A stretch of 64,000 nt of DNA from Salpingoeca rosetta (lineage: Eukaryota > Protista > Choanoflagellata). The notes below the pieces were generated by a model. It did no database searches, was not told the DNA's origin, and saw nothing but the letters and a program-made list of their open reading frames with translations. Made by a program: the position numbers and the translations under genes. This document shows positions 1-49,923 of this stretch, in pieces. The stretch's first letter is position 1; the number at the start of each line of letters is the position of its first letter. The DNA is taken from positions 973,679-1,037,678 of the forward strand of contig JAWQFM010000016.1 of assembly GCA_033442325.1 (NCBI GenBank), in the 5' to 3' direction.

Positions 1-18896
<18,896 letters not shown>

Positions 18897-24643: not shown

Positions 24644-25759
24644 ATGACTGAAGAGAACATCCCGGGAGTGGTGATCGACAATGGCTCCGGCGTTATCAAG
24701 AGTGGCTTTGCCGATGCTGACGCACCCCACGCCGTCTTTCCTTCCATCGTTGGCCGTCCACGCCACCATGCACACCACTCCGCCTTTATTGGACCGAACG
24801 CCCAGAGCAAGCGTGGCATACTTGCACTTGAATACCCCATTGAGCACGGCATCGTGACCAACTGGGACGACATGGAGAAGATCTGGCACCACACCTTCTG
24901 CGACGAGCTCAAGGTGGATCCTGAGAACCATTCTGTCCTCCTCACGGAAGCTTGCCTCAACCCCCGAGCCAACCGCGAGAAGATGGCCCAGATCATGTTT
25001 GAGACGTTCAAGACACCTGGCGTGTACGTTGCCACAGCTCCAGTATTGTCGCTGTTCGCTTCCGGACGCACCACTGGCGTGGTTGTGGACTGTGGTGATG
25101 GCGTGACGCAGATTGTGCCTGTGTACGAAGATTGCTTCCTTCGGCACACCATTCAGCGCCTCGACCTTGCCGGCCGCGATCTCACCGACTACATGATCAA
25201 GCTGCTGGATGGGCACGCGTACACCTTCAGGTCGACGGCTGAGCGTGACATTGCCCGTGGTGCCAAGGAGAAGCTCTCCTACGTCGCCCTCGATTACGAA
25301 CAGGAGATGTCAGCTAATTGTGCTGACGTTGAAGATTGGTATGAGCTTCCCGATGGCCAGGTTCTGAGCGTCTGCCACGAGCGCTTTCGCTGTGCAGAGC
25401 CGCTCTTCCAACCTCACATCCTCGGTCTAGAGATGGCTGGCATTCACGAACTCACCTACAACTCGATTTCGCGGTGCAACGATAACATCCCTGAGGAACC
25501 GTTCGCCAATCCCGAAATTGTGCTTGCTGGCGGCACCACCATGATGCCGGGCTTTGTCGAACGCATGCACAAAGAGATCACCGCCCTTGCGCCATCCACC
25601 ATGAATATCAAGATCATTGCTCCTCCCAAGCGCAAGCAGGCTGCATGGCTCGGCGGCTCCATCCTCGCCTCCCTCTCCACCTTCCAGCAGACGTGGATCA
25701 CCAAGGCCGAGTATGACGAAGTCGGGCCGTCTATTGTCCACCGCAAGTGTTGGTCCTAA
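24644..25759 (+). CDS. Divergent actin paralog A, 371 aa, intronless
   Basis: Full-length actin fold ([47 protein letters not shown]) with a shortened His-rich D-loop. Confidence 0.95.
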
Positions 25760-25818
25760 ACACACACACAGGTCTGGGCGCGCGCGCGCGTGTGTGTGTA
25801 TGTGTGTGTCTGTCTGTC

Positions 25819-25876
<58 letters not shown>

Positions 25877-25924
25877 TGTCTAGTCTGTCTGTCTGTGTTA
25901 GGCAGGATGGTCAGACAAGCGTGT

Positions 25925-26024
25925 NNNNNNNNNNNNNNNNNNNNNNNNNNNNNNNNNNNNNNNNNNNNNNNNNNNNNNNNNNNNNNNNNNNNNNNNNNNN
26001 NNNNNNNNNNNNNNNNNNNNNNNN
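25925..26024. other. Assembly gap (100 N)
   Basis: N run between actin A and actin B. Confidence 1.
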
Positions 26025-26078
<54 letters not shown>

Positions 26079-26665
26079 TGTCTGTCTGTCTGTCTGTGTG
26101 TCTGTCCGTGTGTATGTGTCTGTGTGTCTGTCTGTCTGTCTGTGTGTCTGCGTGTCTGTATGTCTGTCCAACCATCTGGTCGTGCCTGTACCTGCTTGTC
26201 TGTATTTCCCTCCCCTCTACCCCCTTAACTGCCCTACTCCCTTGCTCCCCTGCTTCCTCGCACTGGCGTTGTTCCTGCCTGCATTGTACCTATTCTTGTA
26301 CCACTATCACTCTCTTCGTCCTCTTCATTCCTTCGCACATGCTCCTCCTGTCACATCTTCCCCCGCCATTGCTGTTCGCTCGTTCCCCCTTTCCACCATG
26401 TGCCACTGTGACACACCACTGCGCACCCTTCCCTCTTCTCTTCTGGGGTACACTGCAAAAGAAAGCCAACATGAAGCCAGCAAGCCAGAGAAGGCAACCA
26501 GGGCCTCAGGGCAACAGCCTCACAAGCGCATTCATGTGGCCAGAAACGGACGAGCACTCCCAGCCAAACAACGCGTTTGCTGGAAGGACTCTTGCTTGTG
26601 AGATTTCGCATTTCACAACCAACTTCACAACCAACCAACCAACCCACCAACGGACACGACATACG

Positions 26666-27805
26666 ATGGCGGAGATTGACCCAGATGCACCTGCTGTTGT
26701 TCTTGACAACGGTTCCTTCGAGTGCAAGGCCGGGTTTGCGGGGGAGGATGAGCCGCGTGCGGTCTTTCCCGCCGTGGTGGGGCGCCCTCACCACCACGGC
26801 CAGGCCGACGCGGGCCACAAGCACAGGGACGCGTACGTTGGCGCGGAAGCCCTGGAGAAGAGCGATGTTCTCACGCTCAGGTACCCTGTTGAGCACCGCA
26901 TTGTGACCAACTGGGACGACATGGAGAAGATCTGGCACCACACCTTCCACAACGAGCTCAAGGTGGATCCTGAGAAGCAGCCGGTGCTTCTGACCGAGCC
27001 TCCGCTCAACCCCAAGCCCAACCGTGAGAAGATGACCCAGATCATGTTTGAGACGTTCAACACGCCCGCAGCCTACCTGTCCAATCAAGCCGTGCTCTCC
27101 CTGTACGCCTGCGGCCGTACCACGGGTATCGTCCTCGACTCTGGTTACGACGTCACCCACACGGTCCCCATCTCCGAGGGTTACGCCCTGCCTCACGCCA
27201 TCCTGCGCCTCGACCTCGCCGGCCGCCATCTCACCAACTACATGATGAACCTCCTCACCGAGCGCGGTTACTCCTTCACCACCACCGCCGAGCGTGACAC
27301 TGCCCGCGACATCAAGGAAAAGCTCTCCTACGTCGCCCTCGACTTTGAGCAGGAGATGGCCACCGCCGCTTCCTCCTCCAGCCTGGAGAAGAGCTACGAC
27401 CTCCCCGATGGCCAGAGCATTACTATCGGCAACGAGCGCTTCCGCTGCCCTGAGGCGCTCTTCCAGCCGTCCCTCCTGGACATTGAGGCCACGGGCATCC
27501 ACGAGCAACTGAACACCTCAGTACTCAGGTGTGACCTCGACATCTACAGGGTGATGCTCAACAACATTGTGCTCTCTGGCGGCACCACGCTGTTCCCCGG
27601 CATTGCCAAGCGCATGCAGAAGGAGATGACTGCACTTGCGCCCGCTGCGCTGAGTGTCAAGATTGCGCCCCCTGCAGACAGCAAGTATGCCGTGTGGGAG
27701 GGAGGTGCCATCCTCACCTCACTCTCCACCTTTGAGGACCTGTGGATCTCCAAGGCCGAGTACGACGAGTCTGGCCCCTCGATTGTCCACCGCAAGTGCA
27801 CGTAA
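26666..27805 (+). CDS. Divergent actin paralog B, 379 aa, intronless
   Basis: ATG at 26666 ([17 protein letters not shown]). Actin motifs run throughout to [10 protein letters not shown]. The upstream part of the listed 671-aa ORF is microsatellite and gap. Confidence 0.95.
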
Positions 27806-41397: not shown

Positions 41398-41487
41398 CGT
41401 CGCGGTGTGGTTGTGGAAGATTTGTGAACATCTTTCAACAACAATCGGTGGGAGGACAGCAAATGTGTGTTGTGTGTGTGTGTGTGT

Positions 41488-41521
<34 letters not shown>

Positions 41522-42062
41522 CTGTGTCTGTGTGTCTCTTCTTAGTCTCTTTGTCCTCAAGCGCTCTTCACTCTCTCGCTTTCTCCCTTGCTCAGCAGCA
41601 CAAGCAGCCTTCTTCAGTTGCCCGCACGTGTGCTTGAATCTCTTACAATGACTGTATCCTTTGTTGGCTGTGTTGGTGTAATTGATCACTATTTTCACCA
41701 ACTCAATGGTTGTGTACAAGTGTCTAAGTGTACGACAACGTAAATACGTACAGATGTCATCAGGTCAAGGAGGGAAGGTCTTCATAGAATAGTACTGTCC
41801 AAGTTAAGGAGAACGAGGGGACAGGCCAGTGCTAGAGTGCTAGAGCGAGTGCCCTCCTCTAGTCCTCTCAGCCACTTGAGCAAAGCTGATTCAAGTAATC
41901 GACAATCGACAATTACAAAGAAGAAGGTCAAAACAAACTCTACAGAACTCTACAAGCAGTGAATCCTGTGGATCAGTAACAGCAAGGCAACACTCGAACC
42001 ATCTAACAGTTACGCCCACACACGCACACCTTCACTCTCATGCACACAACCCATCGACGTCA

Positions 42063-43733
42063 TCACCGCTTTTGCTGCTGCTGTTGGTGTGAGTGGGCTG
42101 CTGCTGGCCCGTGTCGTCCTTCGTCTATCAGCTCAACGGCGGAGGTCAGTAGCGCTGCGGCCGTCTTGGCAAGGGCGCGTGCACCGATTGAATCCGAAGC
42201 CGCCAGAGTTGCGGTATCCGAGGGCGAAGGGAGGGACTGCAGGAGTACTTGAGAGAACTGGCATGCAGCGCCAACAACGGCGGCGTCCATGGCGTGGTGC
42301 TGTAGCGCCTCAGCCAAGGCTTCGAGGATGCCCAGGTCCACAACCTCGCGCACAAGCGCGTCGCCCTCATCGCTCCGCAGGATGAGCTTGGTCAGAACCT
42401 TGCAAGCTGCTCGCTGGATGCAGGGTACGCGCGTGTGGGTGTGCATGGCGGTGGCGATGGCGGAAACAGCGCCAGCACGCACCAAGGGCTCGTGTTGCAT
42501 GTCAGGGTCCCGAGTAAGCCGTCGCAGAATCCTGCAGCCGTATGCTTGGATGGCATCGTCTCCTTGATGGTGCCACATTGCCGTGAGCACGGGTTCAGGG
42601 ATGCGTTCCCGCAGCAGACAGCGCATGCTGTGCTCGTCCTCCCCGGCGTCCAGCTGCTCTTCTCGTGGGTGCTGCTGCTTGCGTGTGCTAAAGAGAAACG
42701 ACATCACACGGTCCAGGATGCGACAGCCTAGTCGCTGCAACTCGCATACGCGCGGGTGGGCACGCATGACGCCAAGGACGGTGTTCACAGCAAGTTGATC
42801 CCGTGCAAGGCAGCACACAATGCTGGTGGGACTCTCGATGCTGCAGGCAACAAGGGCGGCGAGCGCGGCCGTCGCTCCTTCAGGACAGGACATGTGCTCC
42901 TGTGCATCACTCGTGAGGCGGCGAACGCACGCCCGCGAGTCATCACGCCCCTCGTCCGTGCGGGTTTTTGCAGCGTGCTTGTCGTCGGCGCCGTTGCCAT
43001 CGTCGCTCGTGCCCACGCTGCTGGTCTCAGCTTCTTCGTACAGCGTCGGCAGCGTCGGGGCTACTGTGCAATGTTTCGGGACGACAGATGGTGTTGGTGC
43101 TGCTGGTCGCAGTTGTGTTGGTGCTGCTGGCTGTGGTTGTGTTGGTGCTGCTGGCCGCAGTTGTGTTGGTGCTGCTGGTCGCAGTTGTGTTGGTGCTGCT
43201 GGCTGTGGTTGTGTTGGTGCTGAAGGAGCTGGGTTGCTGCCACAGCTGGTTACTCTTGCCATCGCCGCCTCGATGGTGTGCAGGACCTGTTGTGGTGGCG
43301 TCGTCCTGGCCTCTGACGAGGAGGATGGTAACGTGTGTGCTAGCCAGGCGCACGAATGCAAGCGGGACGTCGAGAGGATGCGCTGGCTGGCCCAGTACTT
43401 GAAGCGGTGGCACATGTGCACAAGCACGATCGGCGTGTTGGCTTGCAAAATGTAACGCAGCTCGTCGTGACTGCTGAACATGTCGCAGGTGCGCTTGCCG
43501 AAGAGCTTTGACCCGAGCAGCACAATCACATCCGCAGCCTTGATATTGGCGCATGCCTCCGCCACTGCGTCAGGGTCGTCTCGGCGCACAGGGGTGGTAA
43601 ACACGACACTGTTGTAGCGATCATTCAGGTCATGTTGCAGGGCACGGGCCTCGATTCCCGTCTCCACTTCATTGTGTGCAATGTAGATGGTGTGTTGAAA
43701 CGAGCTGCTGGGGTTGGTAGGCGCTGGTGTCAT
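42063..43733 (-). CDS. TIR-like domain + Pro/Thr-rich linker + armadillo-type repeat protein, 556 aa, intronless
   Basis: N-terminal TIR pattern IYIAH...ARALQHDL...VF...IKAADVIVLLGSKLFG...SHDELRYIL...PIVLVHM. C-terminal repeats VLGVMRAHPRVCELQRLGC, VLTAMWHHQGDDAIQAYGC, IATAMHTHTRVPCIQRAAC and LAEALQHHAMDAAVVGAAC. Confidence 0.72.
   Translation of the reverse strand: MTPAPTNPSSSFQHTIYIAHNEVETGIEARALQHDLNDRYNSVVFTTPVRRDDPDAVAEACANIKAADVIVLLGSKLFGKRTCDMFSSHDELRYILQANTPIVLVHMCHRFKYWASQRILSTSRLHSCAWLAHTLPSSSSEARTTPPQQVLHTIEAAMARVTSCGSNPAPSAPTQPQPAAPTQLRPAAPTQLRPAAPTQPQPAAPTQLRPAAPTPSVVPKHCTVAPTLPTLYEEAETSSVGTSDDGNGADDKHAAKTRTDEGRDDSRACVRRLTSDAQEHMSCPEGATAALAALVACSIESPTSIVCCLARDQLAVNTVLGVMRAHPRVCELQRLGCRILDRVMSFLFSTRKQQHPREEQLDAGEDEHSMRCLLRERIPEPVLTAMWHHQGDDAIQAYGCRILRRLTRDPDMQHEPLVRAGAVSAIATAMHTHTRVPCIQRAACKVLTKLILRSDEGDALVREVVDLGILEALAEALQHHAMDAAVVGAACQFSQVLLQSLPSPSDTATLAASDSIGARALAKTAAALLTSAVELIDEGRHGPAAAHSHQQQQQKR
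43091..43222. repeat. Coding 24-bp minisatellite, ~5.5 units encoding PAAPTQ(LR/PQ)
   Basis: Visible tandem repeat in the TIR-ARM linker. Confidence 0.92.

Positions 43734-44286: not shown

Positions 44287-49923
<5,637 letters not shown>

What the first reader, a model, noticed from the sequence alone, without database searches (positions are those of the whole stretch)
42063..43733. Intronless TIR-linker-ARM protein: a reverse-order SARM1-like candidate immune or NADase module
Seen: the first ~135 aa have TIR topology (IYIAH, IKAADVIVLLGS, SHDELRYI, PIVLV). A Glu (codon 43461-43463) sits at the alphaC position. After it come a PAAPTQ repeat linker and about four or five ARM-like repeats. Known: that Glu is the catalytic residue of NAD+-cleaving TIRs (SARM1, plant TNLs, bacterial ThsB), and SARM1 is ARM-SAM-SAM-TIR with ARM as an autoinhibitory sensor. 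Inference: this is an independently assembled sensor-enzyme with TIR first and no SAM, possibly an undescribed innate-immune or cell-death effector in a unicellular relative of animals. Being intronless among intron-rich neighbours suggests recent insertion or family expansion.
Basis: partly seen in the sequence, partly recalled or inferred. Interest (0 to 1): 0.78.

Follow-up and report, generated by a model that had tools for sequence, protein, structure and literature searches.

The report
Choanoflagellate TIR-like–armadillo repeat protein gene
This single-exon gene of the choanoflagellate Salpingoeca rosetta joins a divergent TIR-type (NAD-cleaving type) domain to armadillo repeats; it is one diverged copy of a family of at least 33 such domains in this genome, of a kind already noted in the literature.

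Summary
ORF 42063-43733 (-) encodes 556 aa. It has an N-terminal beta-alpha domain, a proline-rich linker with a 24-nt tandem repeat, and four to five armadillo-type repeats.

The window is Salpingoeca rosetta. The public assembly already calls this gene as a single exon.

Pfam does not recognise the N-domain itself. It does belong to a family of at least 33 paralogous domains in this genome. 48 of 58 aligned members match TIR_2, and several match DUF4062 above threshold.

The AlphaFold model (pLDDT 93) is closest to solved TIR domains: IL-1RAcPb, TIR-1, SARM1 and RPS4/RRS1, at Z 11.3-12.0.

This copy and its sister PTSG_03693 alone have lost the beta-A Ser and Arg that sit beside that Glu (S19A, R21N). 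Full NADase activity is therefore doubtful.

dN/dS against the sister is 0.17-0.29 and dS is about 0.85. The gene is a constrained, old duplicate, not a recent insertion.

TIR+Arm proteins in choanoflagellates (2018) and DUF4062 'NIR' NADases (2026 preprints) are already described.

Verdict: a new member of a known kind, of modest interest.

The parts
42063..43733 (-). Complete single-exon coding sequence, 556 aa plus stop
   Evidence: The ORF list shows it. The public assembly GCA_000188695.1 calls the identical 556-aa product over 1671 nt, so it has no intron.
43299..43694 (-). N-terminal TIR-like domain (about aa 14-145), with a five-strand, five-helix beta-alpha topology
   Evidence: The AF2 model has pLDDT 93. 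VIA-align top hits are TIR domains at Z 11.3-12.0. The family profile finds Roq1, RPV1, PdTIR and SARM1 TIR structures. hhalign to S. rosetta TIR_2 domains gives 96% probability. There is no direct Pfam hit.
43461..43463 (-). Codon of Glu91, at the catalytic-Glu position of TIR NADases, in the first turn of helix alpha-C
   Evidence: The translation confirms the residue. It is invariant in 58/58 family members. The same column in paralog L024 aligns to Roq1 E86, which is the catalytic Glu (10.1101/2020.08.13.246413). The spacing E+10=P before beta-D is the same as in a canonical S. rosetta TIR_2 domain.
43671..43679 (-). Codons of Ala19-His20-Asn21. They replace the family's Ser-Leu-Arg after strand beta-A.
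   Evidence: Column counts: Ser in 52 of 55 with Ala in only 2, and Arg in 45 with Asn in only 2. In both columns the two exceptions are this gene and its sister. The equivalent Ser lies 2.6-2.7 A from the catalytic Glu in SARM1 and SNC1, and Ser-to-Ala lowers NADase activity (10.1101/2025.04.09.647920).
42948..43298 (-). Poorly conserved Pro/Ala/Thr-rich linker (about aa 146-262)
   Evidence: The alignment with the sister paralog is gapped here, with 46% identity and dN/dS 0.35.
43091..43222 (-). 24-nt coding tandem repeat, 5.5 copies, encoding the PAAPTQ(L/P)(R/Q) units
   Evidence: Tandem Repeats Finder reports it. It is absent from the sister paralog.
42213..42947 (-). C-terminal armadillo-type repeat solenoid (about aa 263-507), with four to five repeats
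   Evidence: Pfam ARM_LRRK2 scores 27.5 and 30.1 bits. The repeat motif appears in the alignment. The AF2 model is all-helical with pLDDT 86. The Foldseek list is dominated by ARM proteins, though with weak E-values.

Best explanation
This is a Salpingoeca rosetta protein-coding gene for a two-module cytosolic protein. The N-terminal module is a TIR-superfamily domain that lies between Pfam TIR_2 and DUF4062 ('NIR'). The C-terminal module is an LRRK2-type armadillo solenoid. A disordered repeat linker joins them.

Shown here: the fold, the architecture, membership of an expanded paralog family, purifying selection, and retention of the invariant Glu at the catalytic position.

Inferred: the TIR-like domain binds NAD+ (or a related nucleotide) and cleaves or cyclises it through Glu91 when several molecules are brought together. 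The armadillo repeats would be the ligand- or partner-binding part that controls this. That would make it one of many effector-plus-variable-repeat proteins (ARM, WD40, ankyrin, PDZ, Roc-COR partners) used in stress or microbe-response signalling.

This copy and its sister have replaced the Ser and Arg that flank the Glu in the pocket. Their activity is therefore probably reduced or altered compared with consensus family members.
For: Fold: the AF2 model has pLDDT 93 and pTM 0.87 with beta-alpha x5 topology. The best structural matches are TIR domains: IL-1RAcPb Z 12.0, C. elegans TIR-1 11.8, SARM1 11.5 and RPS4/RRS1 11.3. ESM Atlas neighbours are TIR_2, ThsB and DUF4062 clusters at TM 0.68-0.74.

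Homology: there are at least 33 paralogous domains in the genome. 48 of 58 family members hit TIR_2, 22 hit DUF4062 and 9 hit TIR. Paralogs exceed the DUF4062 gathering threshold. The family profile finds only TIR structures at the top of the PDB list, with Roq1 at E 2e-4. hhalign against canonical S. rosetta TIR_2 gives 96% probability, E 3e-9.

Catalytic position: Glu91 is invariant in 58/58 and aligns to Roq1 E86.

Enzymology of relatives: DUF4062 domains are Glu-dependent NADases in bacteria and in human TEP1 (10.64898/2026.05.01.722283 and 10.64898/2026.09.04.749371). A different S. rosetta TIR makes cADPR (10.64898/2026.04.20.719644).

Constraint: dN/dS is 0.17 for the TIR-like part and 0.29 for the ARM part.

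Modularity: partner domains across the family are ARM_LRRK2, WD40, Ank, PDZ, Receptor-L, Roc-COR and RRM/MLLE. The same TIR-like-then-ARM order occurs in Microstomoeca roanoka.
Against: The window protein's own N-domain gives no Pfam hit even at E 10.

It and its sister alone have Ala for the beta-A Ser and Asn for the Arg. The Ser lies next to the catalytic Glu in SARM1 and SNC1, and Ser-to-Ala reduced NADase activity in RBA1.

There is no oligomerisation module (no SAM, no STAND NTPase), and TIR NADases usually need forced self-association.

hhalign places the family Glu two residues off the TIR_2 Glu in a gapped, low-confidence stretch. The exact match appears only in the HMMER alignment to Roq1 and in a gapless register anchored on beta-D.

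Nucleoside 2-deoxyribosyltransferase and MilB folds score nearly as high, at Z 10.7-10.8.

No expression, localisation or biochemical data exist for this gene.
Confidence: 0.5

Rival explanations
1. It is a non-catalytic TIR-like adaptor. The N-domain serves only as a protein-protein interaction or regulatory module. For example, it could pair with catalytically competent family members, as RRS1 does with RPS4. The armadillo repeats would bind a partner.
For: The beta-A Ser and Arg are lost specifically in this gene and its sister. That Ser matters for NADase activity in other TIRs. Many animal TIR domains act as scaffolds (established knowledge).
Against: Glu91 and the other family-invariant positions (G79, C108, W130) are retained, and dN/dS is 0.17. 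Ser-to-Ala reduced but did not abolish activity in RBA1.
Confidence: 0.3
2. It is a nucleotide N-glycosidase of the NDT/MilB/DNPH1 type rather than an NADase. It would act on a nucleoside monophosphate or a modified nucleotide.
For: NDT, MilB and DNPH1 structures score close to TIRs: Z 10.7-10.8 and Foldseek TM 0.53-0.57. The original paper links DUF4062 to both the TIR and NDT clans.
Against: Sequence-profile hits go only to TIR families and TIR structures, never to NDT. The top structural hits are TIRs.
Confidence: 0.08
3. It is a spurious or decaying ORF: a pseudogene, or a chance open frame in GC-rich DNA.
For: There is no direct Pfam hit on the N-terminus, and the linker is low-complexity.
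Against: The frame is intact at 556 aa and shares its start with the paralog. dN/dS is well below 1 in both domains. AF2 confidence is high for both domains. The public genome calls it as a gene.
Confidence: 0.02

Closest known systems
Choanoflagellate intracellular TIR proteins with Arm/Ank/SH2 partners (Richter et al. 2018, PMC6040629)
   Same: Same organism group and the same domain combination (TIR-type domain plus armadillo repeats, no transmembrane segment). Family members in S. rosetta are labelled 'TIR domain-containing' (PTSG_02868) or 'DUF4062 domain-containing' (PTSG_10764) by UniProt.
   Different: That paper lists the combination in one sentence and does not characterise it. The window protein itself escapes Pfam TIR models, so it was probably not counted there.
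DUF4062 / 'NIR' TIR-like NADases (bacterial Swarozyc, Avs2, Vulcan, Vesta; human TEP1, NWD1/2)
   Same: N-terminal TIR-like domain with a conserved Glu, followed by a variable C-terminal sensor. Several paralogs pass the PF13271 threshold. The 'GxxYG' stretch after beta-C is shared.
   Different: Most eukaryotic NIR proteins are NLR-like, with a STAND NTPase. This protein has none. The family as a whole matches TIR_2 more often than DUF4062, at 48 against 22 of 58. The window copy passes neither model.
SARM1 / TIR-1 (ARM-SAM-SAM-TIR NADase)
   Same: It combines an armadillo solenoid with a Glu-bearing TIR-type domain. SARM1 and TIR-1 TIR domains are among the best structural matches, at Z 11.5-11.8.
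   Different: The domain order is reversed, there are no SAM octamerisation domains, and the ARM is of the LRRK2 type. No specific sequence kinship to SARM1 was found. Choanoflagellates have their own SARM1 homologs (PMC6040629). The beta-A Ser (SARM1 S567) is Ala here.
PTSG_03693 (S. rosetta paralog on G000 contig C7)
   Same: 61% identity over the whole length, with the same start, the same architecture and the same S19A/R21N substitutions.
   Different: It lacks the 24-nt repeat expansion in the linker. Its public model omits 8 in-frame residues.

Membership tests
TIR superfamily (Pfam TIR / TIR_2 / DUF4062 group) | Flavodoxin-like fold of five parallel strands and five helices that superposes on solved TIR domains | tested here: met
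   The AF2 model has pLDDT 93 with topology E-H x5. VIA-align top hits are TIR domains at Z 11.3-12.0 over 123-127 residues. ESM Atlas structure neighbours are TIR_2, ThsB and DUF4062 clusters.
TIR superfamily (Pfam TIR / TIR_2 / DUF4062 group) | Significant sequence or profile similarity to TIR models | tested here: met
   The test fails for the single sequence (no Pfam hit at E 10). It is met through the family. The window domain matches paralogs at E 1e-25 to 1e-61. 48 of 58 members hit TIR_2. The profile finds the Roq1 TIR at E 2e-4. hhalign against S. rosetta TIR_2 gives 96% probability.
TIR superfamily, NADase subset | Conserved Glu on helix alpha-C at the catalytic position | tested here: met
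   E91 is invariant in 58/58 and lies in the first turn of the third helix. The family column aligns with Roq1 E86. hhalign is off by two residues in a gapped region. Atomic superposition was not possible with these tools.
TIR superfamily, NADase subset | Conserved Ser after strand beta-A, next to the catalytic Glu (SARM1 S567, SNC1 S26) | tested here: not met
   The window has Ala19, whereas 52 of 55 family members have Ser. The following Arg is Asn here. The role of the Ser is taken from 10.1101/2025.04.09.647920.
TIR superfamily, NADase subset | Glu-dependent NAD+ cleavage or cyclisation | not testable with these tools
   This needs biochemistry.
DUF4062 / NIR (PF13271) | Score above the Pfam gathering threshold (24.7 bits) | tested here: not met
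   The window protein gives no hit. Paralogs score 25-34 bits.
DUF4062 / NIR (PF13271) | Typical eukaryotic context: N-terminal to a STAND/NACHT NTPase (NLR-like) | tested here: not met
   No NTPase domain is present. Only ARM_LRRK2 is found. The context is described in 10.64898/2026.09.04.749371.
SARM1 family | ARM-SAM-SAM-TIR order with tandem SAM domains | tested here: not met
   The TIR-like domain comes first, the ARM last, and there is no SAM hit at E 10.
Armadillo-repeat proteins | Tandem repeats of about 42 residues and three helices, recognised by ARM profiles | tested here: met
   ARM_LRRK2 scores 27.5 and 30.1 bits against a cut-off of 26.2, which is marginal. Paralogs score up to 1e-33. 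The AF2 model is all-helical with pLDDT 86. Foldseek hits are importin-alpha, designed ARM, APC, beta-catenin and LRRK2, but with E of 1.5e-3 or weaker.

The most novel reading that the evidence does not exclude
The genes in S. rosetta that pair this TIR-like domain with ARM repeats (about 15), together with the WD40, ankyrin, PDZ and Receptor-L variants, are a choanoflagellate innate-immune receptor repertoire that works without any NTPase. The repeat solenoid would bind a microbial or danger ligand directly. Clustering would then switch on a NAD+-derived signal or NAD+ depletion. The window gene and its sister, which keep the Glu but have lost the pocket Ser/Arg, would be attenuated sensor or decoy partners of active members, in the manner of plant RRS1/RPS4 pairs.
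Probability: 0.15. Interest if true: 0.7.

Novelty: new member of a known kind. Interest (0 to 1): 0.35.

Why it matters
It assigns a fold and a testable activity to a 'hypothetical protein' that standard domain scans leave half blank. It also shows that S. rosetta carries a large, modular family of TIR-like domains that bridges TIR_2 and the recently characterised DUF4062/NIR NADases. Choanoflagellates are the sister group of animals, so this family bears on how NAD-based immune or stress signalling was organised before animals arose. The S19A/R21N pair offers a natural contrast for asking which pocket residues such enzymes need. The gene itself is one diverged paralog of an architecture already noted in print, so on its own it would not surprise a specialist.

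Tried and rejected
Direct Pfam scans of the whole protein and of the isolated N-terminus found no TIR family.

phmmer of the N-terminus against PDB sequences gave only noise: LacI, congerin.

Foldseek against PDB gave weak, mixed flavodoxin-like hits. VIA-align was needed to rank TIRs on top.

The word-index protein search returned only the protein itself and one paralog, because low-complexity words filled the candidate list.

hhalign of the family against a single canonical S. rosetta DUF4062 sequence was uninformative, at 2% probability. A second DUF4062 locus had an in-frame stop and was dropped.

The bacterial promoter/terminator scan is irrelevant in a eukaryote.

I searched the supplements of the 2026 animal-TIR preprint for ARM architectures and for this gene's relatives. 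I found only other S. rosetta TIR proteins.

No paper mentions PTSG_03693.

My first guess from the (CA)n-rich intergenic DNA was a trypanosomatid. That was rejected once the paralog proved to be an S. rosetta protein.

'Recent insertion' was rejected on dS of about 0.85.

I built no phylogenetic tree and ran no search for orthologs outside the representative library.

Full report
**What is there**

The minus strand of the window carries an uninterrupted ATG-to-stop frame at 42063-43733, encoding 556 aa. Codon 43461-43463 is the Glu of FSSHD-E-LRYIL, residue 91. The PAAPTQ linker is a genuine 24-nt tandem repeat at 43091-43222, with 5.5 copies and 88% matches.

**Organism and gene model**

The only close database relative is Salpingoeca rosetta PTSG_03693, at 61% identity over 97% of the query. 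That protein is encoded at 98% identity on contig C7 of the window's own 55.4-Mb genome. The only difference is an 8-residue gap.

So the window is S. rosetta, and PTSG_03693 is a paralog. The public assembly GCA_000188695.1 (GL832968.1) calls exactly this 556-aa product over 1671 nt, which means a single exon.

The two immediate neighbours clearly contain introns: CDT1 has 793 aa over 5.6 kb, and arfaptin has 499 aa over 4.3 kb. Other nearby genes are intronless as well: actin (375 aa over 1128 nt), a GT11-like gene (453 aa over 1362 nt) and the OFD1-like oxygenase.

**The N-terminal domain**

Pfam finds nothing on residues 1-150, even at E 10. phmmer against PDB sequences gives only noise.

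A six-frame search of the genome with this segment finds 33 matches. All lie in long open frames without internal stops. They range from E 9e-61 (the sister gene) and about 1e-25 down to the weakest listed match at E 0.9.

I fetched twenty of these and scanned them. Their N-domains hit DUF4062 above the gathering threshold in four cases (25-34 bits). They hit TIR_2 just below threshold in many cases. One hit PF01582 TIR above threshold.

A profile of the 21 domains found 984 cluster representatives at E <= 1e-3 among 1.84 billion proteins. Most of the top hits I looked up by name are S. rosetta proteins. The rest come from other choanoflagellates (Hartaetosiga gracilis, Craspedida sp. UC1, Microstomoeca roanoka) or from unnamed environmental contigs.

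Of 58 aligned domain sequences, 48 match TIR_2, 22 match DUF4062 and 9 match TIR at E <= 0.01. The family profile puts only TIR structures at the top of the PDB list: Roq1 at 2e-4, RPV1, PdTIR, SARM1 and RUN1. hhalign against six canonical TIR_2 domains of S. rosetta gives 96% probability, E 3e-9.

AlphaFold2 on the 58-row alignment gives pLDDT 93 and pTM 0.87, with strict beta-alpha x5 topology. Foldseek hits were weak and mixed. An exhaustive VIA-align search ranks TIR domains first:

| Structure | Z |
|---|---|
| IL-1RAcPb TIR | 12.0 |
| C. elegans TIR-1 | 11.8 |
| SARM1 TIR | 11.5 |
| RPS4/RRS1 TIR | 11.3 |
| NDT and MilB enzymes | 10.7-10.8 |

ESM Atlas independently returns TIR_2, ThsB and DUF4062 clusters. 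The TIR-type fold and superfamily membership are therefore well supported. The domain sits between TIR_2 and DUF4062.

**The Glu and its surroundings**

Glu91 is invariant in all 58 sequences, as are G79 and C108. It lies in the first turn of the third helix.

HMMER aligns the same column of paralog L024 with Roq1 E86. The Roq1 paper identifies E86 as the catalytic glutamate (10.1101/2020.08.13.246413).

hhalign places the Glu two residues off in a gapped, low-confidence stretch. Read directly, however, the family and a canonical S. rosetta TIR_2 domain share the same spacing, Glu-x8-Lys-Pro-(Ile/Phe) into strand beta-D. A gapless register therefore puts Glu on Glu. The tools give no model coordinates, so I could not test the pocket geometry.

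This gene and its sister are the only two of 58 sequences with Ala in place of the beta-A Ser. Ser occurs in 52 of 55. They are also the only two with Asn in place of the following Arg, which occurs in 45.

In SARM1 (S567) and SNC1 (S26) that Ser lies 2.6-2.7 A from the catalytic Glu, and Ser-to-Ala lowered NADase activity in RBA1 (10.1101/2025.04.09.647920). The catalytic prediction is thus weaker for this copy than for the family at large.

**The C-terminal domain**

ARM_LRRK2 is the only Pfam hit: 27.5 bits in the whole protein and 30.1 bits on the isolated C-terminus, against a cut-off of 26.2. The same region recurs in the same paralogs that share the N-domain. The two modules therefore duplicated together.

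Alignment shows four repeats of the type AMxxHxxxxxxQxxGCxxLxxL. AF2 gives an all-helical solenoid with pLDDT 86. The Foldseek list is almost entirely armadillo proteins, though with weak E-values. There is no SAM domain and no NTPase.

**Family picture**

About 15 S. rosetta genes combine this N-domain with ARM repeats. Other members carry WD40, ankyrin, PDZ, Receptor-L, Roc-COR, SH2 or RRM+MLLE modules. The TIR-like-then-ARM order also occurs in Microstomoeca roanoka.

Against its sister the window gene shows the following:

| Region | dN/dS |
|---|---|
| TIR-like domain | 0.17 |
| ARM region | 0.29 |
| Linker | 0.35 |

dS is about 0.85. This is an old duplicate under constraint, not a recent insertion.

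**What is known**

Richter et al. 2018 state that choanoflagellate intracellular TIR proteins are associated with Ank, Arm and SH2 domains (PMC6040629).

Two 2026 preprints show that DUF4062 is a TIR-like, Glu-dependent NADase in phage defence and in human TEP1. One of them reports it in 96% of choanoflagellates (10.64898/2026.05.01.722283 and 10.64898/2026.09.04.749371).

A third preprint found that a different S. rosetta TIR makes cADPR (10.64898/2026.04.20.719644). No paper mentions this gene or PTSG_03693.

**Verdict**

This is a TIR-type domain with the right Glu, followed by ARM repeats, in an expanded family.

It is not specifically SARM1-like, not recently inserted, and not an undescribed kind. 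This particular copy also has a degraded pocket.

My best reading, at confidence 0.5, is a NAD-processing effector regulated by its ARM module, with reduced or altered activity. The main rival, at 0.3, is a non-catalytic adaptor or decoy. It is a new member of a known kind, with interest 0.35.

Noticed in passing
L021:4718-8626 (+), which is G000 contig C17 near 622274: A 1303-aa open frame joins the same TIR-like N-domain to four RRM and five MLLE domains, that is, a poly(A)-binding-protein-like body. A NADase-type domain on a PABP is an unusual fusion.
   Followed up: no
L038:2660-9760 (-), G000 C10 near 914091; and L041:1023-2816 (-), G000 C17 near 83052: Further family members carry other partners: a 2367-aa frame with a Receptor-L domain, and a 598-aa frame with two PDZ domains.
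   Followed up: partly
L009:4340-6028 (+), G000 C7, gene PTSG_03693: The public protein model lacks 8 residues (RVSYIQRA). They are in frame in the genome and conserved in the window paralog (RVPCIQRA). The 24-nt 'intron' is probably an annotation artefact.
   Followed up: partly
window 43410-43412 (-), codon of Cys108: A Cys in the motif K-M-C-(D/E)-x-F just after strand beta-D is invariant in 58/58 family members. It is not a canonical TIR motif, and its role is unknown.
   Followed up: no
window 41480-41560 and 44290-45420: Long (CA)n/(GT)n microsatellites flank the gene on both sides. They generate spurious Cys/Val- and His/Thr-rich ORFs in all frames.
   Followed up: no
window 24644-25759 (+) and 25790-27805 (+): Two tandem actin genes each lie within a single open frame and cover the whole Pfam Actin model. 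The second frame carries about 300 extra N-terminal residues. Other notes of this scan already flag them.
   Followed up: no
window 7096-13566 (-): Two adjacent long frames (1248 and 847 aa) match the VPS13 middle and N-terminal regions. They are probably large exons of one VPS13-like gene.
   Followed up: no
G000 contig C16, 870523-870786 (+), about 103 kb before the window start (L043:748-1410): A short (221-aa frame) TIR-like-only family member lies on the same contig as the window gene.
   Followed up: partly
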